Below, piece after piece: positions 4,294 through 61,444 of a stretch of 64,000 bases of DNA. This DNA is from Octopus sinensis (Eukaryota). The notes below the pieces were generated by a model that saw nothing but the letters and a program-made list of their open reading frames with translations, was not told where the DNA came from and ran no database searches. Numbering within the stretch: the stretch's first letter is position 1; each line of letters starts with the position of its first letter. The stretch lies in the NCBI RefSeq assembly GCF_006345805.1, contig NC_042998.1, positions 205,344,001-205,408,000 on the forward strand, in the 5' to 3' direction. The position numbers and the translations under genes are program-made.

Positions 4294-5878
4294 CTGAAAC
4301 ACAAGCAAAACCATTCTCAGCAATTTTACCATCTCTTATAATTCTATCAATAACATTATCATCGTTGATTTTTTGCTTGGATTCAGCTTTTGCTTTTTTA
4401 AACTGTTTTCGTAAAATTTGTTCAACTTTGCCACCCTGGGGTAATATCAGGAAATACACAATAATTATAATTTCACTTTTCTTAAGTTTCTTGGTGCTTA
4501 TATCCATGAAATGAATACTAATTTTCAAAAGCAAAATATTACCTGAAAATCAAACAAGTTTCTCATTTGTGTATTTGCATTTAATATCATTTCCCAGCTT
4601 TGATCAACACAAGCCACAATTCTACTCCACCCAATAATTTCATGAAAACTGCATATTTTTCAGAAACACTCTTCCTACACATTTTATGTTAATTCTCTCC
4701 CTCTCTCCCCCCCTCCTTTCTGTCTATGATGTAAAACAGGACTACAGAACTCAGCCAGCAACATTTTTGTTATATCATTTGTTATGAAAAGAGTCTGAAA
4801 CTATTAACATCTGTGTAGATCAGATCTAAGCTCATACAGCCAATGGCTTGAGCCTCCAGCTGGGTCTGTAACTTGTTAGAAATAGTAACCGAATATCTCT
4901 CAGATCACAACCTACTGCCTTTCAAAAATGAAGGACATATTGGACAATGATGTCTCAGATAATTTATGCCTGAATAGACAAGATGGTCATGACTGGAATG
5001 TCTTTTGATCATAACCTTGTTCCATCTATTCTCTCCTTTTCAATGAATTTCCCCCAATACCCCATGAGTCCTCCTCACACAATCCAAAACATGATGGCCA
5101 CTTCTGCTCCAGCTGCCTTGAAGTACATTTCAGCTGAAGGCCAGTAAGTCGGCCTGCATTAATATTTCAAATATCTAATTAATAAATTAATTTTATTTCA
5201 TTCTCAGCAATTAGTTACTCATTAGATGAGGACCAATCCAAAAGTATCGGGACTGGTGCTATAAAAAGAAAACTACAACACATAGCAAGAGCCAAGAAAA
5301 CCTGTCTGCCACAACAGAACGGATACCAGTGTTGGTGCCACGTTAAAAGCATCTAATACACTCTATGGAGTGGTTGGCATTAGGAAAGGCAGCCTGTCAT
5401 AGAGACCATCCCAGAACAGACTATGGAGCCTGGTGTGGCGCCTGGCCTTACCAGCTCCAGTCAAACCCGGAAACCCATGCCAGCATGGAAAATGGGCATT
5501 AAATGATGATGATGATGATATCAATTTGGCATTTAATCTCCTCCAAAGGAGCCACACTATCCAGTGTCGTTTTCAGTGATGGAAGCATTTCTGGAACTCC
5601 TTTCTTGGGACACTAAGTACCTGCCTCATCGCTTTCTCTTGGATTTCCTTGATGCCCTTGAAATTTCATTCCTTTCAAATGGGATTTCATCATCACCATC
5701 GTTTAATGTCTGTCTTCCATGCTGGCATGGGTGGGATGGTTTGACAGGGGCTGGCCAGGCATGAGTCTGCACCAGACTTCTGTGTCTGTTTTGGAATGGT
5801 TTTTACAGCTGGATGCCCTTCCTAATACCAACGGGAAAAAGGAAAAGTCACAAAGGGTGAGATCTGGTAACATGGTAG

Positions 5879-19070: not shown

Positions 19071-20483
19071 GCTCATAGGGAGTGAGCTGAATGCTAATGA
19101 GTTAAATCTTAATTAAGAAATATTATTGATTGTTGTTATGAATCTATGTTTGTTTATTTTAGATCCCACTTTGCCAAACTATTGTGCCATCAGTCACAGG
19201 TTTAGCTGAGGATCCCTGTTATTGGGTCCCAGTACTTAGGGCAGTCAGAGGAACAAGGGATTGTCTTTGCAACTTGGGTGAAACAAATACTATAAGCGAC
19301 TTCATTCGAAAGAATTTGTTAAAAGCAAACATATATATACACACTCATGGCAAATACTGGTGTCACACAAATGGCACCTGTGCCAGGGGCACGTAAATGC
19401 ACCCATTACACCCTTACAGTGGTTGGCATTAAGAAGGGCATCCAGCCGTAGAAAACCATACCAAATCAGGCTGGAGCCTGGTGCAGCTCTCCAGCTTGCC
19501 AGCTCTGGTCAAACCGTCCAACCCATGCCAGCATGGACAACTGACGCTAAATGATGATGATGATGATGATTCAGAAACACACACACATTTACACATATAC
19601 ATATACACACACGTCTTTTAAATTCGTTTATGGTAACGCTAACGATATGCAAATAAAGCTCCTTTTCATTATGCCAGCTACCAACTAATGAGACTGACCA
19701 GTGAGTCCGATTTTCAGGGTTGCATCATGGTTGGACCGATATAATGCAGGATAAATGTAACAACAACAACAATAATTCTAGGATGGCATTTATAAATATT
19801 TAACACATCACTTCACCCTTTTCCACAAATCCCATGATTTTGACATCAGAGTCAGTATCCTTGCAGTTAGTATCATCCATGGGCATCTGGTTGATCATCA
19901 TCATTGATTCATTTCATGAGGTGATACTGTATTATTGGATGAATACACATAGGTATTCATCTCTTATTATAAAAGGCAGATTTTATCTGCCTCCCTTTGT
20001 CACTTATAGAAATCTACAATATAGGATTTCTTCAATTACAATTTACCTAGCATTTTTAAGAGTAGAATGCATCGGGTCATGCCAGGTCCAGTTTTTAAAA
20101 TTTAAACTCTAATTAAGCAAAATTTACAGAAAACTCACATTCTGGTGTGTATGTCAAATGCTTTTCTTAGTCTGGTTTACAGTACACGCAAACGCACACA
20201 CACAGTGTGCAACGAATAAAGTGAAACTAATTCACTGTGAGTGTGTTGACAGGTAGACAATAGAATGCGATGACGATGTAATATTTGTTTCTGTCTATCA
20301 CGCTGATAGATACATGAGTAAAATGTATGGCAAGCTAAGAGATAAGAGTGAGTGAAAATGTTCTTGGAAGAGAGTAAATAGCGACAGAGTGATATGAGGA
20401 AGACTAAACTGAAAGTATGAAACAGTGTTTATGTATAAACAGACGACACTTATATATAGTTATTAATAAATGTATGCATCCGT

Positions 20484-21856: not shown

Positions 21857-22144
21857 CAATCTCAACCAGATCCTCTCGAGGCCCAACGTCGGCAAGAAGC
21901 TAAGCGAAGAGCTAATGCAAGAAGACGTGCTAAGGAACAGTTTGAGAGGCTGACCCCAGAACCAGTCCCCGGTAGAAAACACATCGATGTTCAAACTGAG
22001 CTTTATCTTGAAGAAATCTCTGACCGTGTTGAAGAAGCTGATGTTGACATCCAAACGGATTACTTTCTAGATCGTCCTCCAACACCTTTGTATGTCCCAG
22101 CCAAAACTGGAATTGATGTTGCAACACAGATACTTGACGGAGAG
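21857..22144 (+). CDS. RSPH3: RSPH3 coding exon 3 (288 nt)
   Basis: ttttatag|CAA; encodes QSQPDPLEAQRRQEAKRR...LTPEPVPGRKHIDVQTELYLEEISDR...QTDYFLDRPPTPLYVPAKTGIDVATQILDGE; donor GAG|gtatgt. Not listed in the supplied ORF track. Confidence 0.97.
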
Positions 22145-24470: not shown

Positions 24471-24476
24471 CACGAT

Positions 24477-26395
24477 CATCATCGTTTAGCGTCCGCTTTC
24501 CATGCTAGCATGGGTTGGATGGTTCAACTGGGGTCTGGGAAGCCAGAAGGCTGTACCAGGCCCAGTCTGATCTGACAATGTTTCTATAGCTGGATGCCCT
24601 TCCTAACGCCAACCACTCCGTGATTGTAGTGGGTGCATTTTACGTGCCACCAGCACAAGGCCAGTCAGGGTGGCGCTGGCAACATCCATGTTCAGATGGT
24701 TCTCTTATGTACCACCGGCACTGGTATCACAGCTGCAATTTCCATTGATGTTGATCGATTTTGATTTCGATTTTCACTTGCCCCAACAGGTCTTCACAAG
24801 TAGAGTTTTGTGTCCCAAGAAGGAAAGCTATGCATAAGTGGACTGACTACGTCCCAGGTAGGGGCCACGGGTTATGGCCTGACTAGTCCTGCCGGGTCTT
24901 CTCACGCACAGCATACTTCCAAGGGTCTCACACTCTAGTCATTTCCTCAGTGAGACCTAAAGTTCGAAGGTCGTGCTTCACCACCTCGTCCCAGGTTTTC
25001 CTGGGTCTGCCTCTTCCACAGGTTCCCTCAACCGCTAGGGTGTGGCACTTTTTCACACAACTATCTTCATCCATTCTCGTCACATGGCCATACCAGTACA
25101 AACGTCTCTCTTGCACACCATAACTGATGCTTCTTAGATCCAGCTTTTCTCTCAAGGTACTTACACTCTGTCGAGTATGAACACTGACATTACACATCCA
25201 TCGGAGCATACTGGCTTCATTTCTTGCAAGCTTATGCATATCCTCAGCAGTCACAGCCCATGTTTCACTGCCATGTAGCATGGCTGTTCATACACACGCT
25301 TCATACAGTCTGCCTTTCACTCTGAGCGAGAGGCCTTTTGTCACCAGCAGAGGTAAGAGCTCTCTGAACTTTGCCCAAACTATTCTTACTCTAGCAGTTA
25401 CACTTTCAGCACACCCGCCCCCGCTGCTGACTTGGTCACCTAGGTAATGGAAGCTTTCAACTATTTCTAATTTTTCTCCCTGGAATGTGGCAGAAGTTGG
25501 TCTCAGAGCATTTTCAGTGTTTATTGCTCCTGAGCATCTGCCACATACAAAAACTATCTTCCTTTGACATTGCTGCACCTCTTATGTGTCCATAGCTTAC
25601 ACTTGGTGCATCTTATAGAGTTTCTACCTACACCTTTTCTACAGATCGAGCAGGGCCATCTACCTGAAGGCGTTTGTGATTTGTCTACCTTCCTACTTAT
25701 TAGGACTTTGGTTTTAGCTAGATTGACTCTAAGGCTCTTCGATTCTAATCCTTTCTTCCACACTTGAAACTTCTCCAGTTCTGATAGAGACTCAGCAATT
25801 AGAGCAAGGTCATCAGCATAGAGGAGCTCCCAGGGGCATCCTGTCTTGAATTCCTCCGTTATTGCCTGGAGGACTATGATAAATAGGAGAGGGCTTGAAC
25901 TGAGCCTTGGTAGACCCCTACCTCTACCCGGAATTCTTCACTGTACACGTTGCCAACCCTCACCTTACTAGCGGCATCCCTGTACATGGCTCGCACAGCT
26001 CTCACTAACCATTCATCTATCCCTAGTTTCCTCATTGACCACCAGATAAGGGATCGGGGGACCCTGTCAAAGGCTTTCTCCATGTCAACAAAAGCCAGGT
26101 ACAGGGGCTTATCTTTGGCTAGGTATTTCTCCTGCAGCTGCCTTACCAGGAATATAGCATCAGTGGTACTTTTCCCTGGCACGAACCCACACTGCATCTC
26201 ATCTAAAGTGACTCTCTCTCTAATTAGTTGGGCTATGACCCTCTCCGTGACCTTCATTACCTCATCCAGCAACTTGATACCTCTGTAATTATTTGTATCT
26301 AGGGCGCCACCTTTACCTTTGTAGCAGTTGACTATTATGCTGCTACACCAGTCATTGGGTATGACTCCTTCGTGTATCACCTGAATTGTGGCACC
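24477..26395 (-). mobile_element. RTE-clade LINE, 5'-truncated (RT, C-terminus, 3' UTR with (ATG)n tail)
   Basis: RT motifs NYRGIKLL, AFVDMEKAFDRVP, GVYQGS; C-terminal MLHGSETWA...GRGRPRKTW; several stops and frameshifts. Confidence 0.92.
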
Positions 26396-27056: not shown

Positions 27057-27260
27057 TTATTTGATTTCAATATCGAAGTGCAACCAATATTGGAAGTGCT
27101 CGTTGGGAAGACAATTGAACAGTCTTTGATTGAAGTATTGGAAGAGGAAGAATTGGCGAATCTGAGGAAGCAGCAGCGCCAATATATTGAGTTGCGTAAC
27201 GCTGAACTTGCAGAGCAACAACGACTGGAAGAGCAAAACAGGAGAAAAGTGGAAGAAAAG
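27057..27260 (+). CDS. RSPH3: RSPH3 coding exon 4 (AKAP-type amphipathic helix region)
   Basis: ccag|TTA; LFDFNIEVQPILEVLVGKTIEQSLIEVLEEEELANLRKQQ...VEEK; donor AAG|gtaaag. Confidence 0.97.
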
Positions 27261-28864: not shown

Positions 28865-29027
28865 GAAATGAGAATGTTACAACAAGTTGCTGTTATGAAG
28901 AGAGAGAAAGAAACGGCTGAGAAGATTTCTGCCATGGCTTTTGCCCAGAGCTACCTAAGGGATCTTGTACCCACAGTCTTTGCAATACTTTCAGATAATG
29001 GTTATTTCTATGACCCAGTTGAAAAAG
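28865..29027 (+). CDS. RSPH3: RSPH3 coding exon 5
   Basis: acag|GAA; EMRMLQQ...KISAMAFAQSYLRDLVPTVFAILSDNGYFYDPVEK; donor G|gtaagt in phase 1. Confidence 0.97.
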
Positions 29028-29269
29028 GTAAGTCAGCCTGTTTCCATTTAATTGCTTTTATATTGCATTTAGGATGCAAGAGTAGCAAGAGTGTTTCTGT
29101 GTATTATGGCATAACAAATCTCACATGGAGTTTATCAGTTCAAAAGTATCAAACGAGTATTTGTTTTCTCACACATCTTTTGCCAAAATATAAAACCTAC
29201 ACACACTATAAACCTGTAGCAAAAGGAACAAGACACTTGGAGAAATTCACCCTTTTACCTGACCCTGCA

Positions 29270-30110
29270 GTTCTTGTAACATGGTGAACGATGCCTCAAT
29301 ACATTGCACTGTCTGTGAGCCTTCCAACCTCACAAACTGCCCCTAATCCTTTTGGTCCTTTGCCAAGAGAGACTTTGTCAATTTTGTGGATTCTTCCTTT
29401 TCTTCATTTCTCAAACAGAATGGTTCTGCAAGCAGTTTTCTCTCTGACAAACCCTCCACATTACTAAATCTTCTCCAAAACTTTCTATTCTGCTAGATTC
29501 ACCACAACAAACACCTCTTGTCACTTCAAATATAAAGGGCCAGTAGCCCCTTGTATAACCTTCAACTAATAGACCCAATGCCATCCCTGTCCTTACCAAA
29601 CTCTTCAATTTGTCTGTCTGTCTTTACTGACCCTCATTACTCTCATACTCTCAAAGATGATGAGAGCAGCCATTTACAATAATCTTATCCATTACTTTGA
29701 ATCTCTCCCCTTCCACCTAGTGACCACCACTACTGGTTTTATTAAGCTAGGTCCACTGCAGACCTACTCTAGTGGGCACTTGCACTCAACATATTTGCTA
29801 AAAGCAATGCCATTATCCTCAACAATTGTAAAACTTTTTAGCATTCCCAGCATGCAAATCTCCAGTGAAACTACCCACAATGCACTGCATTCATCCCTTA
29901 GATCAATGGCTTCCTGTTAGATTGCATCACCTCAACATGGGTTTCTGGTGTCCCCTTTAACCCGCACACTCTATCAATCCTGTTGCTCTTCACAATTCAG
30001 TGTTGTCTAACTACACCCCTGCATCAAAAACTTACTTGATGTCACCCCCAAAAATGATCACCCCTACATAAATGATTCCATTCCTGATTCCTTCCTAACC
30101 TTCAGCACAC
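29270..30110 (-). mobile_element. Old RTE-like LINE relic
   Basis: Only faint remnants of the C-terminal GRGRP-like and cysteine-cluster segments on the minus strand. Confidence 0.35.
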
Positions 30111-30571
30111 CTGTGCCATCCACATGCCACCTTAGACCCAGATACCAAACCTAAACTGACTCCTTAAACAGAGCCCTATAATGTGGTTGAATCGTTTTTG
30201 GACCCAAATCCACCAAACTTCAGTTGTTGGCAGCCAAGAATCTGAAGATCGTCGGGAATCTTTGGATTCTATTGTTATGGAGAATTTCTCCTGATGGAAA
30301 TACAACTTCATCGTAGTTAAGATTGTATTTCTAAGACTGACCCTCAGGTGGGACCCTGCTTGGTGTACTCGCTTTATATGGAGGACATTGCTACTGCTAC
30401 TACCTTTGCAGACATTCTTGATCACAGCCAAAGGAAGGTCACTCAACTATCTGACACGACTCATCAATACACTTCAGTATGTGGGTTACAGACATTATAA
30501 CGTCGTTACAGACATTCTGTGTCCTCTCTCTGTCTTTTCTACTACTACTACATAGTGTGTGTGTGTGTGTG

Positions 30572-30601
<30 letters not shown>

Positions 30602-30602
<1 letters not shown>

Positions 30603-31415
30603 CTATATTATAATTCTGAAATGCGAAAAGTTTGTTTGTTTGTCTGATTTTGACATTGAGAACGGGTTAAAGGCCACTAGATCCCGTCGGATTGACTCCA
30701 AAATTTACAGGGACATGTAAAATAAGGTGAGGATGCGAGTGGGCTAGGTTAGAAATCCCCATCTTAAAAGGTGTCGTTGCTAGGGCCACAAACGCACTTT
30801 GACAAGTCTACTCTCATTCTTTTATGTATCTGTCTTCCTCCATCACTCACTCTCTTTTCTCCCTTCCCATCACTTTCTCTCTATAACGTCGTTTCACAGT
30901 GTCTACCTCCCTTCACTTTCCCTTTATAACGCCTTTTCCTAGCGTTCTATATCTACCCCTCCCTGCCTTCGACAGCGCTTTCACACTCTCTCTCTACGTC
31001 TGTCTGCATTCATAGAGAGAATTATCATCGCCACCACCACCACCACACAATCATGAGAACAAATATTATGAATCAGATATTTATATGTGTGTGTGTGTGT
31101 GTGTTCTATATATAAATATGTATATATAATGTATATATACAAAGTGTATATATCTGTATTTATGTATATTAAACTTTTTAATACTTTTTGATAGTTATAT
31201 ATATTTTAAAAAATTATAAATATAAATTAATAATTTTAATTTTAAATTTAAATAATTTAAATGTTTCAATTTTATATTTTATATATTTTGTATATTATAT
31301 TTTTATTTTTATGTTTTGGTTTATGTTTTTCACTGTTTGATTTGCCTAATAGTGGTTTTATCTCTAATTTAATTTATATATATATATATATATATAATTT
31401 GTATATATAATGCAT

Positions 31416-31490
<75 letters not shown>

Positions 31491-32596
31491 GTGTGCATTA
31501 TGTGGTCGGTTGAGCTGAAAATATGCACACCTATGTTAAATGTGCTGGCGAGTTTGCATGACAACTATTTTTTTCCTCAAATGAAAGGCGTAACCTCTAG
31601 GACAAAATTCCTCATCTTATAAAACATGGCCCGAGTAGACCCGAATGAAATCAGGTTATATTAACCAAAATGTGAAAAGGGGGTTTAAATGGGGCTGGAA
31701 GGGGATTAAAATTTACAGGAGCGGGTGTTTAGGAATTCTCTGTTACATCAAGCTAAAAAATTTGCGTCAACCTTTAAATTGTCAATGTGTTGCTGTCCAT
31801 CATGAAGAAGTTTTGAATGCCTGCCATGGTGAGTCTACTATCGTGAGAAAGAATCACTTCAAAACTTGGTGTTTAGGAATTTTCTTTTACATCAAGTTCA
31901 AAATTTTACGCCAGCCGTTAAACTGTCAATACGTTGCTGTCCGTCGTTAAAAAATTTTTATTCAGCTCGCAAGTTCGTCTGTCCCTTTTAAATGTTAGTG
32001 TTTTGCTGTCTGCCTTGAAGCAGACCTTTCCGTTGTCACTGCCTGATATTTATGATTGATCTTTCAAAATATTTTATTTCTCAACTTACTCAAGATCTTT
32101 TGTTGTTTATAAATGGGAGAGAGATAGATAAAGATAGAGAGTAAGAGTCCGAGAGAAAAGAAAAGTAAGAGAGTGGGAAAGTGAGAGAGAAAGGAGAGAG
32201 AAACAAAGAGGGAGAATCATCATCATCATCATCATCGTTTAATGTCCGTTTTTCGTGCTAGTACGGGTTGGACAGTTTGACCAGGGTCTGGGAAGCCAGG
32301 AGGCTACACCGGGCTCCAGTCTGATCTGGAAGTGTTTCTACAGCTGGATGCCCTTCCTAACACCAACCACTCTGTGAGTGTAGCGGGTACTTTTTTCGTG
32401 CCACCGGCACAGGTGCCGGGGGGCTGGCAGCAGCCATGATTGGTTGGTGCTTTTTACGTGCCACCGGCACAGAAGCCAGTCAAGGCGGCGCTGCCATCGG
32501 CCACGTTCGGATGGTGCTTTTTACGTGCTGAAAGGAAGCAACAGAAAGTAACAACCACACTCTTACCCGCACGTAGAGCGGGTCACCTTAAGCTAG
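30602..32596 (+). mobile_element. Non-autonomous Helitron family B, unit 1 of a tandem
   Basis: A|TC 5' end (TCTATATTATAATTCTGAAATGCG), 3' hairpin CCCGC-ACGTAGA-GCGGG, 10-nt spacer, CTAG terminus. Confidence 0.8.
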
Positions 32597-32972
32597 TCTA
32601 TATTATAATTCTGAAATGCGAAAAGTGTCTGGTTTTGGCATTGGAACGGGTTAAAGGCCACTAGATCCCGTCGGATTGACTCCAAAATTTACAGGTGAGC
32701 ATGGGAGTGGGCTAGGTTAGAAATCCCTATCTTAAAAGGTGTGATTACTAGGGCGAAAAACACACATTTTGACAAGTCTCCTCTCATTCTTTTATGTATC
32801 TGTCTTCCTCTGTTTCTCTCTCTTTCCTCCCTTCCCTTCACTTTCTCTCTATAACATCGTTTCACAGCATCCTATATCTTCCCCCACCGCCTTCGACAGC
32901 GCTTTCACACTCTCTCTCTACGTCTGTCTGCATTCAAAGAGAGAATTATCATCGCCACGACCACCACCACAC

Positions 32973-33003
<31 letters not shown>

Positions 33004-34046
33004 GTTTAACGTCCGCTTTCCATGCTAGCATGGGTTGGACGGTTCAACTGGGGTCTGGCAAGCCCGAAGGCTGCACCAGGCCAGTCAGATCTGGCAGTGT
33101 TTCTACAGCTGGATGCCCTTCCTAACGCCAACCACTCCGAGAGTGTAGTGGGTGATTTTATGTGCCACCGACACAGGTGCCAGACGAGGCTGGCAGACGG
33201 TCACGCTCGAATGGTGTTTTTATGTGCCACCGACACAGGTGCCAGACGAGGCTGGCAGACGGCCACGCTCGGATGGTGTTTTTTATGTGCCACCAACAAA
33301 GGTGCCAGACGAGGCTGGCGAACGGCTACGATCGGATGGTGTTTGTTACGTGCCCACGGCACGGGGCCAGTCGATGCGGTACTGGCTACGGTCCCGTTCG
33401 GATGGTTTTCTTATGTGCCACCGGCACTGGTACCACAAGGATACAAATTCCATTGATGTTCATCTATTTGATTTGATTCAATTTGACTTGACTTTCACTT
33501 GCCTCAACAGGTCTTCACAAGTATCACAGCAGGAAGGTATGCACAGGTGGACTGACTACGTCCAGGTAGGGGCCACGGATTATGGCTTCACTAGTCTTGC
33601 CGGGTCTTCTCACGCACAGCATACTTCCATAGGTCTCGGTCTCTAGTCATTTCCATGGTGAGACCTAACGTTCGAAGGTCGTGCTTCACCACCTCGTCCC
33701 AGGTTTTCCTGGGTCTACCTCTTCCACGGGTTCCCTCAACTGCTAGGGATTGGCACTTTCTCGCACACCTATCTTCATCCATTCTTGCCACATGACCATA
33801 CCAGCGCAATCGTCTCTCTTGCACACAACTGATGCTTCTTAGGTACAACATTTCTCTCAAGGAACTAACGCTCATGAGAACAAATATTATGAATCAGATT
33901 TTTATTGAGTTAATTTAAATATGTGTGTGTGTGTGTGTTCTATATATAAATATGTATATATAATGTATATATACAAAGTGTATATATCTGTATTTATATA
34001 TATACCACACTCTTACCCACGCGTAGAGCGGGTCACCTTAAGCTAG
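32597..34046 (+). mobile_element. Non-autonomous Helitron family B, unit 2, with a nested RTE 3' fragment (about 32975-33870, minus strand)
   Basis: Starts TCTATATTATAATTCTG immediately after the CTAG of unit 1; ends hairpin-CTAG|T. The nested ORF RLRWYGHVARMDED...GRGRPRKTW is the RTE C-terminus. Confidence 0.8.
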
Positions 34047-34055
34047 TATATATAT

Positions 34056-34450
34056 AAAACTTAAATAATGAGGGTGATAAATTGAATATTAATTTAATTG
34101 ATATGAATTTAAAACCAGTAGCCTAGCATATAAAAAAATTTGAAAATTCAGAAAAATTCTGAAAAATTGTAATACATGCGTATAATAGGGATAACCACTA
34201 AGTGAACATCCAATATGCTAGAAGAAGATCACCTATGATCTAACTACAAAGAAAAGAATGTTCTCTTTGTAGTTAGATCGTAGGTGATCTATTTCTAGCA
34301 TATTGGATGTCCACTTAGTGGTTATCCCTATTATACGCATGTATTACAATTTTTCAGAATTTTCAGGTTTTTCTATATGCTAGTCTACTGGTTTTAAATT
34401 GATATTAATTAGATTAATATTCAATTTATCACCCTCATTATTTAAATTTT
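34056..34450. repeat. About 195-bp-arm palindrome, with a third partial arm at 34789-34869
   Basis: AAAACTTAAATAATGAGGG... pairs with ...CCCTCATTATTTAAATTTT; centre near 34253-34263. Confidence 0.93.
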
Positions 34451-34640
34451 AAATAATTAAGTTCTCTAACCGGCAACATTAACTGCAGTGAATTATCTAC
34501 TGCAGAATTGTTTCTGGAATTTAGCACACCAGAACTTAGACATTTGAAAATAACCCCAATGTAATCGGTAGGACTATGCACACGTCTAATTTTATAAGGA
34601 CAACAAGTGTATAGTTCTACATATTATATTGAATTGGAAC

Positions 34641-34713
34641 GATCGTACTGAAGAGTCCATGGACGAGAAATTATGTAAGTAATTATCAGTAATGGTGAAA
34701 CCGGTCTATGATT
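34641..34713 (+). ncRNA. Minimal type I hammerhead ribozyme motif, sense strand of RSPH3 intron 5
   Basis: Stem I GATCGTA/TATGATT (7 bp, 2 G-U), core CTGAAGA, extended imperfect stem II, GAAA, palindromic stem III ACCGGT, GUC cleavage triplet (cut after 34706). Confidence 0.7.
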
Positions 34714-34868
34714 AATTCTGTATATTTGTATATTTTCATCTCTCTTACTCACTTATGCTCTGGTGTTTGCTGAATTTCTCTAGAGAATATTCTTTTCTTT
34801 GTAGTTAGATCATAGGTAATCTTCTTCTAGCATATTGGATGTCCAATTAGTGGTTATCCCTATTATAC

Positions 34869-34934
<66 letters not shown>

Positions 34935-34976
34935 TCATCATCATCATCATCGTTTAACGTCCGTTTTCCGCGCTAG

Positions 34977-35066
<90 letters not shown>

Positions 35067-35514
35067 CATCGTCATTGTTGTTTAATGTCCACTTTCCATG
35101 CTAGCATAGGTTGGACAGTTTGACTGAGGACTGGTGAGCCAGAAGGCTGCACCAGGCTCCAATCTGATCTGGCAGAGTTTCTACAACTGGATGCCCTTCC
35201 AACACCAATCACTCTGAGAGTGTAGTGGGTGCTTTTTACATGCCACTGGCACGAGGTGGTAGTGGCATCGACCACGCTTGATTGATGCTTTTTACGTGCC
35301 ACCAGCACAGGAGCCAGTCAGGTAGCACTGGCAACAGCCACACTTGAATGGTGCTTCTTACATGCCTCTGGCACGGGTGCCAGTCAGGCACGGGTGCCAG
35401 TCAGGCAGTGCTGGCATTGGCCATGACAATAACTTCACTTTACTTATCAGGTCTTTGCAAGCACAGTTTATTGCCCAATGATTGAAGGCTACTCTTAAAT
35501 GGACTGGTTATACT

Positions 35515-35748
35515 TATTTCTTTATTGCCCACAAGGGGCTAAACATGGAGGGGACAAACAAGGACAGACAAATGGATTAAGTCGATTACATCGACCCCAG
35601 TGCGTAACTGGTACTTATTTAATCGACCCCAAAAGGATGAAAGGCAAAGTCGACCTTGGTGGAATTTGAACTCAGAACGTAGCGGCGGACGAAATACCGC
35701 AAAGCATTTCGCCCGGCCTGCTAACGTTTCTGCCAGCTCGCCACCTTA
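35515..35748 (-). mobile_element. SINE family A
   Basis: Full-length consensus copy. Confidence 0.85.
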
Positions 35749-36700
35749 ATGGACTGGTTATACTGCACTGGCATAGGCCATGGTTATGGTCTCGCTTGGC
35801 TTGCTGGGTCTTCTCAAGCACAGCATATCTCCAAAGGTCTCAGTCGCTTGTCATTGCCTCGGTAAGGCCCAATGTTCGAAGGTTGTGCTTCACTATCTCA
35901 TCACAGGTCTTCCTGGGTCTGTGTCTGTGTTTGTCCCCCCACCATCGCTTGACAACCGATGTTGGTATGTTTACACCCCCTTAACCTAGTGGTTTGGCAA
36001 AACAGTCCAATAAAATAAGTACTAGGCTCGCAAAGAATAAGTCCTGGGGTCAGTTTGTTCAACTAAAGGTGGTGCTCCAGCATGGCCACAGTCAAATGAC
36101 TGTAACAAAAGAGTAAAACAGTATATATCCATGCACGTGCACACACACACACACACACACACACACACCACATACACACACACACACACACACCACACAC
36201 ATCTACAAGAAAATTTTATTTTTTACATCCAACCCATTCTTTACTGTTAAATACAATGAAAGACTCCAATAAATAATTATATCTTTCTGTATATTACTAA
36301 TTAATGTGGTTAATTAATTAATTACTTGGAGTGTCCTATTGATGTTTTCGTACTACTCACCTGCCCTCATGTAGCACCTGCTGCCTGCCACTGCATCAGA
36401 GCAGGTGAGGCTGAATGGACGAGCTTGAAGTTGGAGCAAAGAAACTGGAAGCTGGCCCTTTTTATGTCTTGAGGATACCAGAAAAACCTGGGACATTTTT
36501 TCCTGGGGGCAGGTTCCATGAATTACCTAAGCGCCCTTCTTTGGGGCATTCTATTTATTTATTATTTTTCTGTTTACATATTCTTTTGTTGTACCTTTTA
36601 ATGTTTTCCTTTGATCAATGTAAACCGCACATATTCTGTGTGTTGTAGCTCATCCTTTGATATTGTCCGCCATATCTTGGGCCCTTGATGACAATTAAAG

Positions 36701-36731
<31 letters not shown>

Positions 36732-36749
36732 TATTATTTTGTTCTTCAG

Positions 36750-36979
36750 ATATTGAAGAGGGTTTCTTGCCCTGGTTAATGCAGAATGTTAACCAAGAAG
36801 TGAATAACAGCAAACTGATCTGCAGAATCGCCGATTCCATGATCGATCACGTGATCAAGGAGAGAAATCTAGCTTTTGTGAGATTAGGAGAACGCCTTAA
36901 GCAGGAGAAAGAGTTGGCGAAAATACCACCGGAACCATCTGGAACAGAGTTAGAGGAAGATCAGATTGAAGAGAGTGAG
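36750..36979 (+). CDS. RSPH3: RSPH3 coding exon 6
   Basis: ttcttcag|AT completes the D codon; DIEEGFLPWLMQNVNQEV...IADSMIDHVIKER...EESE. Strong donor GAG|gtaagt; read-through would instead stop at 37132. Confidence 0.9.
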
Positions 36980-38880: not shown

Positions 38881-39898
38881 AAAAGAAGCAAAAAAAAAGC
38901 TGGCCTTCTGTTGGTGAAGATGGCGAGTGTTCCAGTTGATCCGATCAACAGAACAGCCTGCTCGTGAAATTGATGTGCAAGTGGCTGAGAACTCCACAGA
39001 CACACATATCCTTAATGTTGTTCTCAGAGAGATTCAGCCTGTGAAAAGACTGGCCCCTTTGAATTACTGGTACACTCATTTTTGCTAGGTGGGTGGACTG
39101 GAGCAATGTGAAATAAAGTGTCTTGCTCGAGGAAATATATGTGAAATAAATTGTCTGGCACAATCAAACTCATGACCTCACATCTTCACCACTGTAAGCC
39201 AAATATCCGAACCACCAAGCTATGCACCTTTACTTTCCATAAAGCTGACGACCTGCCATTGTACACGAGAGGTTTCTCACAGTTTCCTCTTTTATCTTTG
39301 TTTTCTGTTTAACTTTTGCATTTGGGATGTGTCATAGGCTGCTTCCAATCATCTTTCATGGTTTTAGAAATGAAAATTCCATCTGGAATGTTCTCTACAT
39401 TGGAATATTTTTCATGAAGGAATTGTGTAGCTTTCTCTTGTTTTCTTTGTTCCTTTCTTTGTAGTTTTACAAGTGAATGATATTTTGGAATTGGCCAAAG
39501 ATAGGTTCTCGGATGGAATTGTAGCAGTGTTAGTTTATTTATATATTTTTAAATAACCAAAATTTTCTTTCTTTTTTTCTTTATGGTACTGAAAACAATC
39601 GGTGATACATTTGTATCTGTTCCGATTTAGTTTTAGATGTTCGGCCAATCAGTTGCTTCTGTTGCTTCTCAGACATTCCTTTCAACCGTTTCCACTTTCT
39701 TTGTTCAGGTTTCGACTGATGATTGGAGACATGAAAAACAAAGTTCGAAAGTTTGAACTTTCAGTTTTAATAGACATAAATATGTTGTAACACTGTACAC
39801 TCAATATTGAGTGCTTTTTTTTTTGATCCGTCTTGTGTATACTCAAGTCCTTGCATTCTAGAGATTCCGTAAGACATATATAAATATATATATAGAGA

Positions 39899-43598: not shown

Positions 43599-44182
43599 TA
43601 TATTATATATATATATTATTAATATATATATATATATATTTATATATATACACATATATATATACCAGTTTGTATATATAGCAATAAATATGTTATTGGT
43701 CTAATGTATTAGATATACAGGGTTATGTATAGATTAATAGATCCATATTGATATATATACTCTTTTACTCTTTTACTTGTTTCAGTCATTTGAGTGCGGC
43801 CATATACAACGGCTTCTTTCAGTTTCCGTCTACCAAATCCACTCACAAGGCATTGGTCGGCCCGGGGCTATAGCAGAAGACACTTGCCCAAGGTGCCACG
43901 CAGTGGGACTGAACCCAGAACCATGTGGTTGGTAAACAAGCTACTTACCACACACCCACTCCTTCGCCTATATATATATATAATCAAAATAAGCAACAAG
44001 GATACCCAAGGTAGTGCCACCTGCAGAGGAGCCAGTGCAGCGGCACTGGCAACAACCTCACTCGAATATGTTTTCACATGTCACTGGCACAAGTGCCAGT
44101 AAGGCGACGCTGGTAACGATCACACTCAAATGGTGCCACACACACACTCACATATATATTTCATATATATATATATATATAT

Positions 44183-45310
44183 ATCATCATCATCATCATT
44201 TAATGTCCGTTTTCCATGGTAGCATGGGTTGGACGGTTCAACCGGGGTCTGGTAAGCCATGGAGGCTGCACCAGGCTCTAGTCTGATTTGGCAGTGTTTC
44301 TACAGCTGGATGCCCTTCCTAACGCCAACCACTCCGTGAGTGTAGTGGGTGGTTTTTACGTGCCACCGGCACAGGGGCCAGAGCAGGCTGGCAAACGGCC
44401 ACGATCGGTCGGTGCTTTTATGTGTCACCGACATGGATGCCAGTCAGGCGACGCTAGTATCTGGCACGTTCGGACAGTGCTCTTTACGTGTCACCGGCAC
44501 GGGTGTCTTAACTACACTTTCCATTTGAATTTTTATTTTGATGTTGACGTTGACGTACTTGACTCAACAGGTCTCCTAAAGAACAAAGGGTCACTCTACG
44601 ATCCAAGGTTAGCACAGCAGGCCGTCCTGCGAGCCATGAACTCACTTCATTTGTCGGGTCTTCACAGTCACAGCATATTTCCAGAGGTCTCGGTCTTTCG
44701 TCATAGCCTCTGTGAGGCTCAAAGTACGAAGGTCATGCTTGACCACCTCATCCCGTGTCTTCCTGGGTCTACCTCTACCTCGGATTCCTTCAACAGTTTG
44801 GGAGTGGCACTTCTTCACACATCTCTCCTCATCCATCCTTAGTACATGACCATACCAACGCAATCGTCTCTCCTGCATGCTACATCCAATGCTTCTTATG
44901 CCCAACATTTCTTTCAGGACGCTTACACTCTGTCGTGCATGGACACTGACAATACTCATCCAGCAGATCATGCTAGCTTCATTTCTTTCAAGCCTACACA
45001 TGTCCTCTGCAGTCACAGCCCATGTTTCACTGCCATGAAGCATGGCAGTTCGCACACATGCATCGTACAATCTACCTTTCACTCTGAGCGAGAAACCCTT
45101 TGTCACCAGTAGGGGAAGAAGCTTCCTAAACTTTGCCCAAGCTATTCTTATTCTAGTGGTAACACTCTCTGAGCATCCACCCCTGCTACTAACTTGGTAG
45201 GACCCAGGTAGCAGAAACTATCAACTACTTCTAGTTTCTCCCAAAGGTGTCTATTGCCCTTGTGCATCTGCCGGACACGAAAGCTATCTTCTTGGTTAAT
45301 TTTCCTTTGA
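44183..45310 (-). mobile_element. RTE-clade LINE 3' fragment, same family as 24477-26395
   Basis: GFSLRVKGRLYDACVRTAMLHGSETWA...GRGRPRK; same 3' UTR and (ATG)n tail. Confidence 0.9.
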
Positions 45311-58914: not shown

Positions 58915-60610
58915 ATAAAATCTCGGACATAGCCTTCACTGCCTCTGACATCATAGCAGCAATAAATGAGGTCAAATACTATTCTGCTGTAGGCCCTGAT
59001 AGATTCCCCACTAGTCTCCTGAAGGAAGGTAGACACTAACTTGCAGTCCCTCTGACCAACCTCTAGAGAAATTCGTTAGACTCAGGTTATATACCGAAAC
59101 AGCTTCTATCTCAGTCGGTCATCCCTGTTTTCAAACAGGGAAACAGATCCCTCGCAGTCAACTATCGTCCAATCTCACTCACCTCCCACATCATTAAAGT
59201 ATTTGAACAGGTGCTGAGATAAAGGATAGCTGGCTTCCTGGAGACCCACAAACTCCTAAATGCAAATCAGCATGGCTTTCGCTGTGTCAGGGACTGTCTA
59301 ACACAGCTCTTACACCACATTGAAGATGTACTCAAAGCCTTGGGAACAGGTTCGAACTCTGATGTCATATATCTTGACTTCAGTAAAGCGTTCGACAGGG
59401 TTGACCATAATATCCTACTCTCAAAATTGGCAAATGTTGGAATCTGTGGAAAACTACTACACTGGATTAAGTATTTCCTGGCGAGTAGAACACAACATGT
59501 TGTAGTTGATGGAGTCCACTCAAGCCCAGCAAAAGTCACCTGCGGTGTCCCCCAGGGGACTGTCTTGGGCCCGCTACTCTTTATAATTTACATAAACGAC
59601 CTTTCTAGTGTCGTACATTACTGCAAAGTGAAAATATTTGCTGATGACACTAAGCTCCAGCCAATCGTCAATGAAGAAACAGACCGAACTCAACTCCAGT
59701 CTGATCTATATGCTGTGAGTCAATGGGCAGACAGAAACAAAATGCAACTGTTTTGAGGGAAAATTTGAGCTGATGCATTTTGGAAGAAATTCCTCACTAA
59801 AACATACTCTCTTCCTTCAGGGGAACCGCTCACAACCTCTAACAATATCAGAGACCTGGATGTAATTGTTGATGACGATCTCAGTTGGAGTGCACGCATC
59901 AACAATAAGGTCGATATACCTCGTAGGATGAGCTCCTGGATCTTAAGAACTTTCCGGCCCAGAGAACAAGGCGTCACCATTTCACTTTTCTCCTCCTTTG
60001 TACGGCCACACCTCGAATAGTGATGCCCCTTGTGGTCTCCCCATACAAAACAAAACATCTCGAGGATCGAATCACCCCAGAGGGCATTCACTAAACAAAT
60101 TGAAGGCATAACTAATCTCGATTATTGGGACCGCCTCAAAGCCTTGAAACTCTACTTTCTCCAGCACCGCCATGAGTGGTACATCATTTATACGATCTGG
60201 AGAATATGCCATCAGCATTGGCCAAACAACCTGAACATTAGTTTCAAGGTTCATCCAAGGCTGGGACCACAGGCCATACGTCCCCTGCCCAATTCAGGAT
60301 TGCAGCATATAGGTACACTGCGACATAATTTCTTTTCCTCAACAGGCCCTGCCCTGTTTAACATTGTCCCAAAAGACATCAAAGAGGAAACGGATCCCAT
60401 CACCTTTAAACAGAGTCTGCACAGATTTCTTCAAGGAATACCAGACAAGCTGCCCATACCTGGATACAACACACTCAATAAGAACTCATTACTTGAATGA
60501 ACCATAAGCAAAACTTGACATTAAAAGGATTTAGATAATCCTATCAGGTGGTGTTATTAAGTTAGACATGGTCCGGACCAATCTTTGGCTGAAACATATC
60601 TAAGTTTTTA
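58915..60610 (+). mobile_element. CR1/L2-group LINE ORF2 relic (RT and C-terminus)
   Basis: NYRPISLTSH, NQHGFR, LDFSKAFDRVDH, GVPQGTVLGPLLF, FADD, VRPHLE motifs; stops and frameshifts. Confidence 0.92.
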
Positions 60611-61444
60611 TGTTTCGAGCCTACGCTCTTCGACAGAAAGGATTAAGAGGGAAAGTAGGGGAAAGAATGAAAAGAAAAAAAAAAACCGAGCGAAAGATAA
60701 TTTTTTGTAGGGGTTAACGAAATATCCAGTATGTTTGTATGTATGTATGTATGTATGTATGTATGTATGTATGTATGTATGTATGTATGTATGTATGTAT
60801 AACAACAGCAAAAATTCATAATAATGCTAAATAGTTCAAGTCTACGGTAAGCAAATTGGTTACAGACACAACTGCAGATAGGAAAAGAAAGTTGTCCGAT
60901 GGCCACTAAACAAGACGGGACCAAATGCCGAATGACGAAACTAAAATCAATGTCTCGAATTGAAAGACCTTCATTTTAGTTCCTCTTTTTTAATAGATTT
61001 TATTATTTCTTGCAAACCATCAAACTTCCAGAAACTTCATCCATTTGGATATATTTTGAACATTTAAATTATTATACATACAGACCTACATTTATTCTGC
61101 TAGTGATGGGTCAGGTTTTAAATTGGATCTGGTTTTTGGGGCCTTAGTAAGTGAGTTCCAGAGTTTTGAAGAATGTGGGACCACCTCTTAGCCGCTGTTT
61201 TCCCCAAGTCTGCTCTGACCCGGTGTAGTAGCACCTGTTAAGGTCCCACTAGCATGTCTCTAGAACCGGCTTCAAACCCAGGCTACTGTGCCTGTTCCGA
61301 TAATCAGCGAATCCTCTGCATTGGTTGACTTTCGACTACAAAATGAGCCGCGACTGATCATACTATTCCAAAGTGTGTGTGCAGGTGACTGGGGACCACA
61401 TGGGAACTTGTTTTTCCACTGAAACTCCGAGCATGAACTCTATT

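What the first reader, a model, noticed from the sequence alone, without database searches (positions are those of the whole stretch)
34641..34713. Sense-strand hammerhead ribozyme with an intact core inside RSPH3 intron 5
Seen: all catalytic core nucleotides (CUGAAGA, GAAA, GUC), a 7-bp stem I, and a self-complementary stem III ACCGGU. Established: palindromic stem III is the hallmark of PLE-associated minimal hammerheads that cleave as dimers, and intronic hammerheads have been retained in amniote genes. Inference: every RSPH3 pre-mRNA carries it, so it could cut intron 5 co-transcriptionally and influence splicing to exon 6 or premature termination.
Basis: partly seen in the sequence, partly recalled or inferred. 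Interest (0 to 1): 0.7.

Follow-up and report, generated by a model that had tools for sequence, protein, structure and literature searches.

The report
Solo retroelement-type hammerhead motif in intron
The hammerhead-ribozyme-like sequence is real and lies on the sense strand of an RSPH3 intron, but it is a lone copy with an abnormal helix II. It is most likely a leftover of a Penelope-like or retrozyme mobile element, not a regulator of the gene.

Summary
- stem I, 34641-47 pairing with 34707-13 (7 bp, two of them G.U)
- CUGAAGA at 34648-54
- GAAA at 34697-700
- palindromic ACCGGU at 34700-05
- cleavage site C17 at 34706

The + strand is the RSPH3 sense strand. The motif lies in the GT..AG intron 29028-36749.

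Chance is unlikely. The family-consensus helix II (GUCC..GGAC) directly follows the core box, and I estimate about 5e-6 such composite matches per window.

It is not a canonical hammerhead:
- 32 extra nucleotides separate GGAC from GAAA.
- Rfam's register reads GAGA in place of GAAA.
- Rfam scores it 18.8 bits against a threshold of 34.
- A model built from 22 natural look-alikes scores it 10.5 bits (E about 1).

The version without the 32 nt occurs in 26 metagenome contigs, several of them 3' of RT+GIY-YIG (Penelope-like element) ORFs.

The window holds no second copy to dimerise with and no Penelope-like ORF remnant.

The motif sits in a ~307-nt, 34% GC domain that folds strongly on the sense strand only (z -5.2 against -0.95), like a solo retrozyme monomer.

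In that context the active fold has a predicted probability of about 0.1%.

Verdict: an ordinary mobile-element relic. A role in splicing is unsupported.

The parts
34641..34647 (+). Stem I, 5' strand (GAUCGUA)
   Evidence: Pairs with 34707-34713 over 7 bp, two of them G.U.
34648..34654 (+). Core box C3-A9 (CUGAAGA)
   Evidence: Exact match and unique in the window when followed by GTCC..GGACGA.
34655..34664 (+). GUCCAUGGAC: the family-consensus helix II strands GUCC/GGAC with only a 2-nt loop; the 10 nt form a palindrome
   Evidence: Rfam RF00163 aligns these as helix II. The natural relatives retrieved all have 5-9 nt in this loop, though the search pattern only admitted 2-8 nt between GTCC and GGAC.
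34655..34696 (+). Equivalently, 32 extra nt (34665-34696) between GGAC and GAAA.
   Evidence: Folds into an irregular hairpin of -6.1 kcal/mol, which is not unusual (168 of 1000 shuffles fold as well). G10.1.U11.1 is not predicted to pair and U34656 is bulged.
34697..34700 (+). G12 A13 A14 A15.1 (GAAA)
34700..34705 (+). Palindromic helix III element ACCGGU. It cannot form a hairpin and could pair only with a second copy.
   Evidence: The HHR-competent homodimer modelled is -25.9 kcal/mol, against -37.2 for the dimer minimum.
34706..34707 (+). Predicted scissile bond, 3' of C17 (GUC|U)
   Evidence: Position follows from the motif. Cleavage was not tested.
34707..34713 (+). Stem I, 3' strand (UAUGAUU)
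34470..34776 (+). Sense-strand-specific structured RNA domain of about 307 nt (34% GC) that encloses the motif. Candidate solo retrozyme or PLE-derived monomer.
   Evidence: For 34456-34781: + strand -89.2 kcal/mol, z -5.17 (0 of 100 shuffles); - strand -65.2, z -0.95. An outlier among 30 random windows of the same size. No other copy in the window.
34462..34468 (+). TTCTCTA, left copy of a 7-nt direct repeat flanking the structured domain (weak candidate for a target-site duplication)
   Evidence: Read from the sequence. Chance is roughly a few percent, so this is inference only.
34776..34782 (+). TTCTCTA, right copy of the 7-nt direct repeat
   Evidence: Read from the sequence.
29028..36749 (+). 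RSPH3 intron that contains the motif (GTAAGT donor, CAG acceptor). Upstream exon about 28865-29027, downstream exon from 36750.
   Evidence: Pfam Radial_spoke_3 matches on + strand ORFs, and splice sites read from the sequence.

Best explanation
The motif is a single genomic copy of a type I hammerhead of the kind carried by Penelope-like elements (PLEs) and their non-autonomous derivatives, the metazoan non-LTR retrozymes. It lies inside a ~307-nt, AT-rich unit that folds strongly as sense-strand RNA. That unit inserted into a repeat-rich RSPH3 intron. In the source element such ribozymes work in pairs: two tandem copies pair through the palindromic ACCGGU to build helix III, and cleavage releases unit-length RNA. 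This copy is alone and its helix II is abnormal, with 32 extra nucleotides between GGAC and GAAA. I therefore infer that it is a dead-end mobile-element relic that cleaves RSPH3 pre-mRNA very poorly or not at all. Shown: the anatomy, the family resemblance, the absence of a partner, the strand, the intron and the predicted structure. Inferred: the retroelement origin of this particular copy and its lack of activity.
For: - All motif blocks are present in the correct order.
- The composite is expected about 5e-6 times per window.
- The version without the 32 nt, CTGANGAGTCC-N-GGACGAAACCGGTC, occurs in 26 low-GC metagenome contigs. At least 7 of 10 adjacent long ORFs on the same strand match RVT_1 and/or GIY-YIG, which marks PLEs. 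One contig carries four tandem copies (L008).
- The window has no second hammerhead and no second ACCGGU-type 3' half in context, and no other copy of 34456-34781.
- The 326-nt unit has z -5.2 on the sense strand and -0.95 on the antisense strand. A natural tandem hammerhead unit shows the same signature, -3.6 against +0.4.
- Size and GC match the published description of animal retrozymes: about 300-bp monomers with GC below 45% (PMC7229834). Solo monomers are described as non-transposing offspring (bioRxiv 10.64898/2026.07.22.740005).
- The motif scores below threshold in Rfam (18.8 against 34 bits) and 10.5 bits, E about 1, with a model of natural look-alikes.
- The catalytic fold has about 0.1% predicted probability in context.
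- A single Schistosoma PLE minimal motif showed no detectable cleavage in vitro (PMC4209133).
Against: - No relative of the 326-nt unit was found: the window has only this copy, the 26 loci show no similarity, and an exact search of metagenome contigs found nothing. Its status as a repeat family is therefore unproven.
- It is not in tandem and no PLE ORF remnant is nearby.
- Most of the structure signal comes from two hairpins upstream of the motif (34470-34517 and 34557-34631). The hammerhead segment itself is not unusual (z -1.0). The structured domain could be an unrelated RNA.
- Thermodynamic models cannot exclude transient co-transcriptional folding. Natural PLE hammerheads show similar competing folds.
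- The 42-nt helix II could be native to an undescribed cephalopod family and could be active in dimers.
Confidence: 0.72

Rival explanations
1. One reading: a catalytically competent minimal hammerhead cuts RSPH3 intron RNA co-transcriptionally, as a trans-dimer or with chaperone help, and thereby affects splicing to the next exon or causes premature termination.
For: The unpaired core letters, the A15.1-U16.1 pair, C17 and a 7-bp stem I are intact in one register. The motif is on the sense strand of the intron, 2.0 kb upstream of the acceptor. The modelled HHR-competent homodimer is about as favourable, relative to two monomers, as in natural PLE hammerheads.
Against: No second copy in cis exists within the 64 kb, so dimerisation would need two separate pre-mRNAs. 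G10.1-C11.1, described as highly conserved in PLE hammerheads (PMC4209133), is replaced by G.U plus a bulge. Helix II is 42 nt long, so a loop1-loop2 contact is implausible. The motif is below the Rfam threshold. The active fold has about 0.1% probability in context and the cleavage site is paired with about 99% probability. A single PLE minimal motif was inactive in vitro and dimers were weak (PMC4209133). In Xenopus, retrozymes are depleted from introns (the 2026 preprint).
Confidence: 0.06
2. A native long-helix-II hammerhead family: the 42-nt helix II is not damage but the normal form in an undescribed cephalopod retrozyme or PLE family that is active in tandem arrays. This copy would be a solo, non-mobile offspring.
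For: The surrounding unit keeps a strong sense-strand-specific fold, which suggests little decay since insertion. The extra nucleotides form a hairpin that is kept in the context minimum-energy fold. PLE minimal hammerheads are reported with enlarged helix II and a bulged base at its 5' end (PMC4209133).
Against: The hairpin is not more stable than shuffles (168 of 1000). The GUCC-AU-GGAC block directly after the core looks like a canonical helix II with a collapsed loop, which fits an indel in a once-canonical motif. No relatives are available to show covariation.
Confidence: 0.18
3. A chance resemblance with no hammerhead ancestry.
For: The loose descriptor is expected about 0.08 times per window, and another loose hit exists at 25849-87 on the - strand. 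My covariance model ranks this motif no better than random hits (E about 1). Rfam's E-value of 0.023 for 131 nt scales to about 11 for the whole window across all families (my scaling).
Against: GUCC..GGACGA directly after CUGANGA was found in 0 of 100 shuffles. Together with GAAA-CCGG-UC and a 7-bp stem I the expectation is about 5e-6 per window, or about 0.2 per 2.7-Gb genome before the CCGG palindrome is counted.
Confidence: 0.04

Closest known systems
Hammerhead ribozymes in the pseudo-LTRs of Penelope-like elements (Cervera & De la Pena 2014, PMC4209133; also Lunse et al. 2017, cited from my own knowledge)
   Same: Type I topology. CUGANGA/GAAA/UH core. Helix III reduced to a short palindrome (A-CCGG-U) that implies action as a dimer. 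Mostly found as scattered single motifs from truncated elements. Blocks identical to hammerheads found here 3' of RT+GIY-YIG ORFs.
   Different: No PLE ORF or pseudo-LTR is recognisable in the window. Helix II carries 32 extra nt and lacks a G10.1-C11.1 pair adjacent to G12. There is no second copy.
Metazoan non-LTR retrozymes (Cervera & De la Pena 2020, PMC7229834; bioRxiv 10.64898/2026.07.22.740005)
   Same: A non-coding unit of about 300 nt with low GC, a type I hammerhead and a strongly folded sense-strand RNA. Solo monomers are a described class.
   Different: The defining tandem arrangement with at least two complete hammerheads is absent. No circular RNA evidence. The family is not shown to be repeated. 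None of the papers I searched or read described cephalopod hammerheads or retrozymes.
Rfam RF00163 Hammerhead_1
   Same: The consensus blocks aUccag-CUGAnGA-GUCC..GGAC-GA.A..UC-cuggAu align across 34642-34712.
   Different: 18.8 bits against a gathering score of 34. The best alignment puts G at A14 and a 36-nt insert in helix III. No hit at the gathering threshold.
Conserved intronic hammerheads of amniotes (HH9 in RECK, HH10; De la Pena & Garcia-Robles 2010, cited from my own knowledge)
   Same: A type I hammerhead on the sense strand of an intron of a protein-coding gene.
   Different: Those are conserved at orthologous sites across amniotes and fold as canonical motifs. Here conservation could not be tested and the motif is non-canonical.

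Membership tests
Hammerhead ribozyme, type I (RF00163) | Core C3 U4 G5 A6 N7 G8 A9 | tested here: met
   CUGAAGA at 34648-54.
Hammerhead ribozyme, type I (RF00163) | G12 A13 A14, the A15.1-U16.1 pair and H17 | tested here: inconclusive
Rfam's best alignment instead uses GAGA at 34665-68, which puts G at position 14.
Hammerhead ribozyme, type I (RF00163) | Helix II closed by G10.1-C11.1, directly flanked by A9 and G12 | tested here: not met
   Either G34655.U34696 with a bulged U and not predicted to pair, or G-C (GUCC/GGAC) separated from GAAA by 32 nt.
Hammerhead ribozyme, type I (RF00163) | Stem I pairing that flanks the core and the cleavage site | tested here: met
   7 bp, 34641-47 with 34707-13.
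Hammerhead ribozyme, type I (RF00163) | Score at or above Rfam's gathering threshold | tested here: not met
   No hit at gathering. 18.8 bits against 34.
Hammerhead ribozyme, type I (RF00163) | Site-specific self-cleavage | not testable with these tools
   Needs an in vitro transcription and cleavage assay.
PLE-associated dimeric hammerhead | Short palindromic helix III / loop 3 | tested here: met
   ACCGGU at 34700-05, identical to 22 distinct natural motifs.
PLE-associated dimeric hammerhead | Location in the flanking repeat of an element that encodes RT + GIY-YIG | tested here: not met
   tblastn with 14 PLE ORF translations finds nothing in the window. The only located RT ORF (59223-59753) is 25 kb away and is a strong RVT_1 match. 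A second + strand ORF matching RVT_1 was not located.
PLE-associated dimeric hammerhead | A second copy nearby that allows the double-hammerhead | tested here: not met
   No other match with the covariance model, the descriptor or the GAAACCGGTC search.
Metazoan non-LTR retrozyme | Tandem repeat with at least two units, each with a complete hammerhead | tested here: not met
   Single copy. No tandem repeat at the locus and no second copy in the window.
Metazoan non-LTR retrozyme | Non-coding unit of about 200-400 nt with low GC | tested here: met
   About 307-326 nt, GC 0.34. No tRNA and no Rfam family.
Metazoan non-LTR retrozyme | Highly structured sense-strand RNA | tested here: met
   z -5.2 on the sense strand against -0.95 on the antisense strand. 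Yardstick L008: -3.6 against +0.4. Most of the signal lies outside the hammerhead segment.
Metazoan non-LTR retrozyme | Expression as linear and circular unit-length RNA | not testable with these tools
   Needs RNA data.
Conserved (domesticated) intronic hammerhead | Presence at the orthologous intron site in related species | not testable with these tools
   The best homologue of an RSPH3 exon in the protein collection is 77% identical. The exon-6 ORF is not on record. No close relative's intron is available.

The most novel reading that the evidence does not exclude
The motif is a domesticated intronic hammerhead with an unusually long helix II. It cleaves RSPH3 pre-mRNA, for example when two nascent transcripts pair or with help from a chaperone, and tunes expression of this radial-spoke gene in ciliated or flagellated cells. 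It would be an invertebrate counterpart of the conserved amniote intronic hammerheads.
Probability: 0.03. Interest if true: 0.6.

Novelty: new member of a known kind. Interest (0 to 1): 0.2.

Why it matters
As it stands this is one more scattered PLE/retrozyme-type hammerhead in an animal intron. The literature describes thousands of such motifs per genome, so its main use is as an annotation: a mobile-element relic, not a regulatory element. It would gain modest value if genome-wide searches showed that the ~307-nt structured unit belongs to a cephalopod retrozyme family. The papers I could search do not describe one. It would gain more value if the long helix II proved to be a native, active variant, because that would widen the known tolerance of the hammerhead fold.

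Tried and rejected
- Internal ~33-nt tandem duplication as the source of the two alternative registers ('ATGGAC-GA-GAAA' and 'ATGGT-GAAA'). Local alignment scores lie within the shuffle distribution (360 and 897 of 2000 shuffles) and TRF finds nothing. Rejected.
- Type III hammerhead reading at 34610-34675. 14.9 bits, E 3.9, out-competed by the type I alignment.
- Exact search for the 5' half in metagenome contigs. No hits.
- Similarity of the flanks or of the whole window to the 26 natural hammerhead loci. None.
- PLE ORF remnants in the window. None.
- Custom covariance model R1. It gave no significant hit and so did not help to choose a register.
- Look-up of the exon-6 ORF to fetch the same or a sister locus. 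Not on record. The conservation test was therefore not possible.
- tRNA-derived SINE head. None.
- Thermodynamic dimer modelling as a discriminator. Natural PLE hammerheads show the same competing folds, so it is uninformative. My first dimer constraint was topologically wrong and was redone.
- 'Mirror structure' energy on the minus strand. Invalid, because non-canonical pairs are not penalised. Ignored.
- The palindrome plus partial tandem at 34051-34876 as a single PLE-style complex insertion with a 532-nt unit. It is compatible with published PLE insertion patterns and with the (TA)n flanks, but the arm boundaries do not fit cleanly. Left open.

Full report
**Observation.** The + strand at 34641-34713 reads GATCGTA CTGAAGA GTCCATGGACGAGAAATTATGTAAGTAATTATCAGTAATGGT GAAA CCGG TC TATGATT.
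- CUGAAGA at 34648-54.
- GAAACCGGUC at 34697-706.
- A 7-bp stem I, GAUCGUA/UAUGAUU, with two G.U pairs.
- The self-complementary ACCGGU, which puts the scissile bond at 34706/34707.

**Gene context.** Translating + strand ORFs and scanning Pfam gives Radial_spoke_3 matches.
- Exons end at 22144 (profile positions 1-62), end at 27260 (58-140), span about 28865-29027 (...AFAQSYLRDLVP...GYFYDPVEK) and start at 36750 (184-224). An NIMYDRRVVRGNTYA exon lies near 18.1 kb.
- The motif therefore lies on the sense strand of the intron 29028-36749 (GTAAGT...CAG). It is 5.6 kb from the donor and 2.0 kb from the acceptor.
- Five RSPH3 exons are visible in the window. I could not verify the numbering 'intron 5'.
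- I could not verify the species. The nearest protein fragment in the collection is only 77% identical.

**Is it more than chance?**
A loose look-alike exists at 25849-87 on the - strand.
- The core box here is followed directly by GUCC..GGAC-GA, which is the helix II of the Rfam type I consensus. That block is unique in the window and absent from 100 shuffles.
- The joint expectation is about 5e-6 per window.
- I conclude that the sequence descends from a real hammerhead.

**It is not a canonical hammerhead.**
- Rfam finds nothing at its gathering thresholds.
- A permissive local scan gives Hammerhead_1 at 18.8 bits against 34, E 0.023 for 131 nt.
Helix II is GUCC-AU-GGAC, the next box is GAGA (G at position 14), and 36 nt are pushed into helix III.
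It needs all 42 nt between A9 and G12 to be helix II: G.U at 10.1-11.1, a bulged U, CCAU/AUGG, then an AU-rich irregular hairpin of -6.1 kcal/mol. That hairpin is no better than shuffles.
- Each register therefore breaks one strongly conserved feature.
- Cervera & De la Pena list the G10.1-C11.1 pair among the features that recur in PLE hammerheads (PMC4209133).

**Relatives.**
- An exact search for the 5' half found nothing in metagenome contigs.
- The same blocks without the extra 32 nt (CTGANGAGTCC-N2-8-GGACGAAACCGGTC) occur in 26 low-GC contigs, with stem I of mostly 4-7 bp and 5-9 nt in loop 2.
- In these contigs the hammerhead lies 3' of long ORFs on the same strand that match RVT_1 and GIY-YIG. 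That is the Penelope-like element (PLE) architecture. One contig has four identical copies in tandem.
- The motif type is therefore the PLE/retrozyme type I hammerhead, whose palindromic helix III implies action as a dimer (PMC4209133, PMC7229834).
- A covariance model built from 22 distinct natural motifs scores the window motif at only 10.5 bits (E about 1), skipping helix II. It finds no other hammerhead in the 64 kb.
- Searches for the 3' half likewise find no second copy in a hammerhead context.
- No PLE ORF remnant is present.

**Surroundings.**
- The 326 nt between two repeat blocks (34456-34781) have no other copy in the window, are 34% GC and hold no tRNA or Rfam family.
- As sense-strand RNA they fold to -89.2 kcal/mol (z -5.2, 0 of 100 shuffles). 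The antisense strand gives -65.2 (z -0.95).
- Among 30 random windows of the same size, only a symmetric (TA)n region is more extreme, and none shows such strand asymmetry.
- A natural tandem hammerhead unit (L008) shows the same signature, -3.6 against +0.4.
- The structured part spans about 34470-34776 and is flanked by a 7-nt direct repeat, TTCTCTA, which is a weak candidate for a target-site duplication.
- Size, GC, non-coding nature and sense-specific folding match published animal retrozyme monomers (PMC7229834). Solo monomers are described as non-mobile offspring, because two hammerheads are needed (bioRxiv 10.64898/2026.07.22.740005).
- Caveats: most of the signal comes from hairpins at 34470-34517 and 34557-34631. 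The hammerhead segment itself is unremarkable (z -1.0). There is no tandem arrangement.

**Likely activity.**
- Inside the 326-nt context the catalytic fold is 7 kcal/mol above the minimum, and stem I has about 0.1% ensemble probability.
- AUGGAC (34659-64) pairs with GUCUAU (34704-09), which covers the cleavage site, with about 99% probability.
- A productive homodimer is about as favourable as in natural PLE motifs. With a single copy per transcript it would need two pre-mRNAs to meet.
- Published assays found no detectable cleavage for a single Schistosoma PLE minimal motif and only weak cleavage for its dimers (PMC4209133). Axolotl monomers cleaved 6-22% per hour (PMC7229834).
- I infer that any cleavage of RSPH3 pre-mRNA is negligible. 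This is prediction, not measurement.

**Verdict.** It is unsupported on 'intact' and on the proposed effect on splicing or termination. The best reading is a solo PLE/retrozyme-derived hammerhead relic, a new instance of a well-known kind and of low interest. Conservation at the orthologous site, genome-wide copy analysis and a cleavage assay would settle the remaining alternatives.

Noticed in passing
window 34557-34631 (+): Hairpin 10 nt upstream of stem I, folded as a 79-nt segment (34555-34633): 23 bp in two blocks plus a small apical stem. -29.7 kcal/mol, z -7.1 on the + strand against -17.8, z -2.6 on the - strand. Its dimensions resemble a miRNA precursor. No Rfam match. It could be a branch of the retrozyme-like RNA or an independent intronic small-RNA hairpin.
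   Followed up: partly
window 34051-34455 and 34782-34876: A near-perfect ~405-nt palindrome (arms 88-95% complementary, centre about 34258). A third 95-nt copy of the inner arm starts about 10 nt before the centre-equivalent position. TA-rich microsatellites flank it on both sides. It is either a foldback/MITE-like element or part of a PLE-style inverted plus partial-tandem insertion. Not resolved.
   Followed up: partly
window 34867-35066: Long (TA)n microsatellites produce spurious sub-threshold Rfam miRNA hits (mir-297, mir-1277, mir-3149).
   Followed up: yes
window 35065-35385; also 32222-32528, 32989-33308, 44154-44505, 24476-24660, 19375-19567 (-), 5335-5521 (-): A SINE-like repeat that starts (CAT)n-GTTTAA(C/T)GTCC...CCATGCTAGCA. 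It has at least seven copies in the window at 73-82% identity.
   Followed up: no
window 59223-59753 (+): An ORF fragment with a strong RVT_1 match (78 bits), probably a LINE-type reverse transcriptase. It is 25 kb from the motif. A second + strand ORF that matches RVT_1 was not located.
   Followed up: partly
window 25849-25887 (-) and 39709-39751 (+): Two loose hammerhead-like matches: CUGAUGA with a 6-7-bp stem I. Both lack a proper helix II, and 39709 also lacks a placed GAAA. They illustrate the chance background for relaxed descriptors.
   Followed up: yes
window 34675-34689 (+): Inside the extra 32 nt, GTAAGT...TTATCAG resembles splice-donor and splice-acceptor consensus sequences only 15 nt apart. 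That is too short for a spliceosomal intron and is probably coincidence.
   Followed up: no
window 60730-60801 (-): Three RSPH3 exon fragments give weak tblastn hits on the opposite strand (best E 2.7e-5, up to 65% identity). Probably low-complexity charged sequence.
   Followed up: no
L008 (metagenome contig TBL_comb48_EPIDRAFT_1049144), 34-1463 (-): Four identical type I hammerheads spaced 607, 185 and 607 nt apart on a 1.5-kb contig. The 607-nt unit folds strongly on the sense strand only. It looks like a retrozyme or PLE tandem array in an environmental sample.
   Followed up: partly
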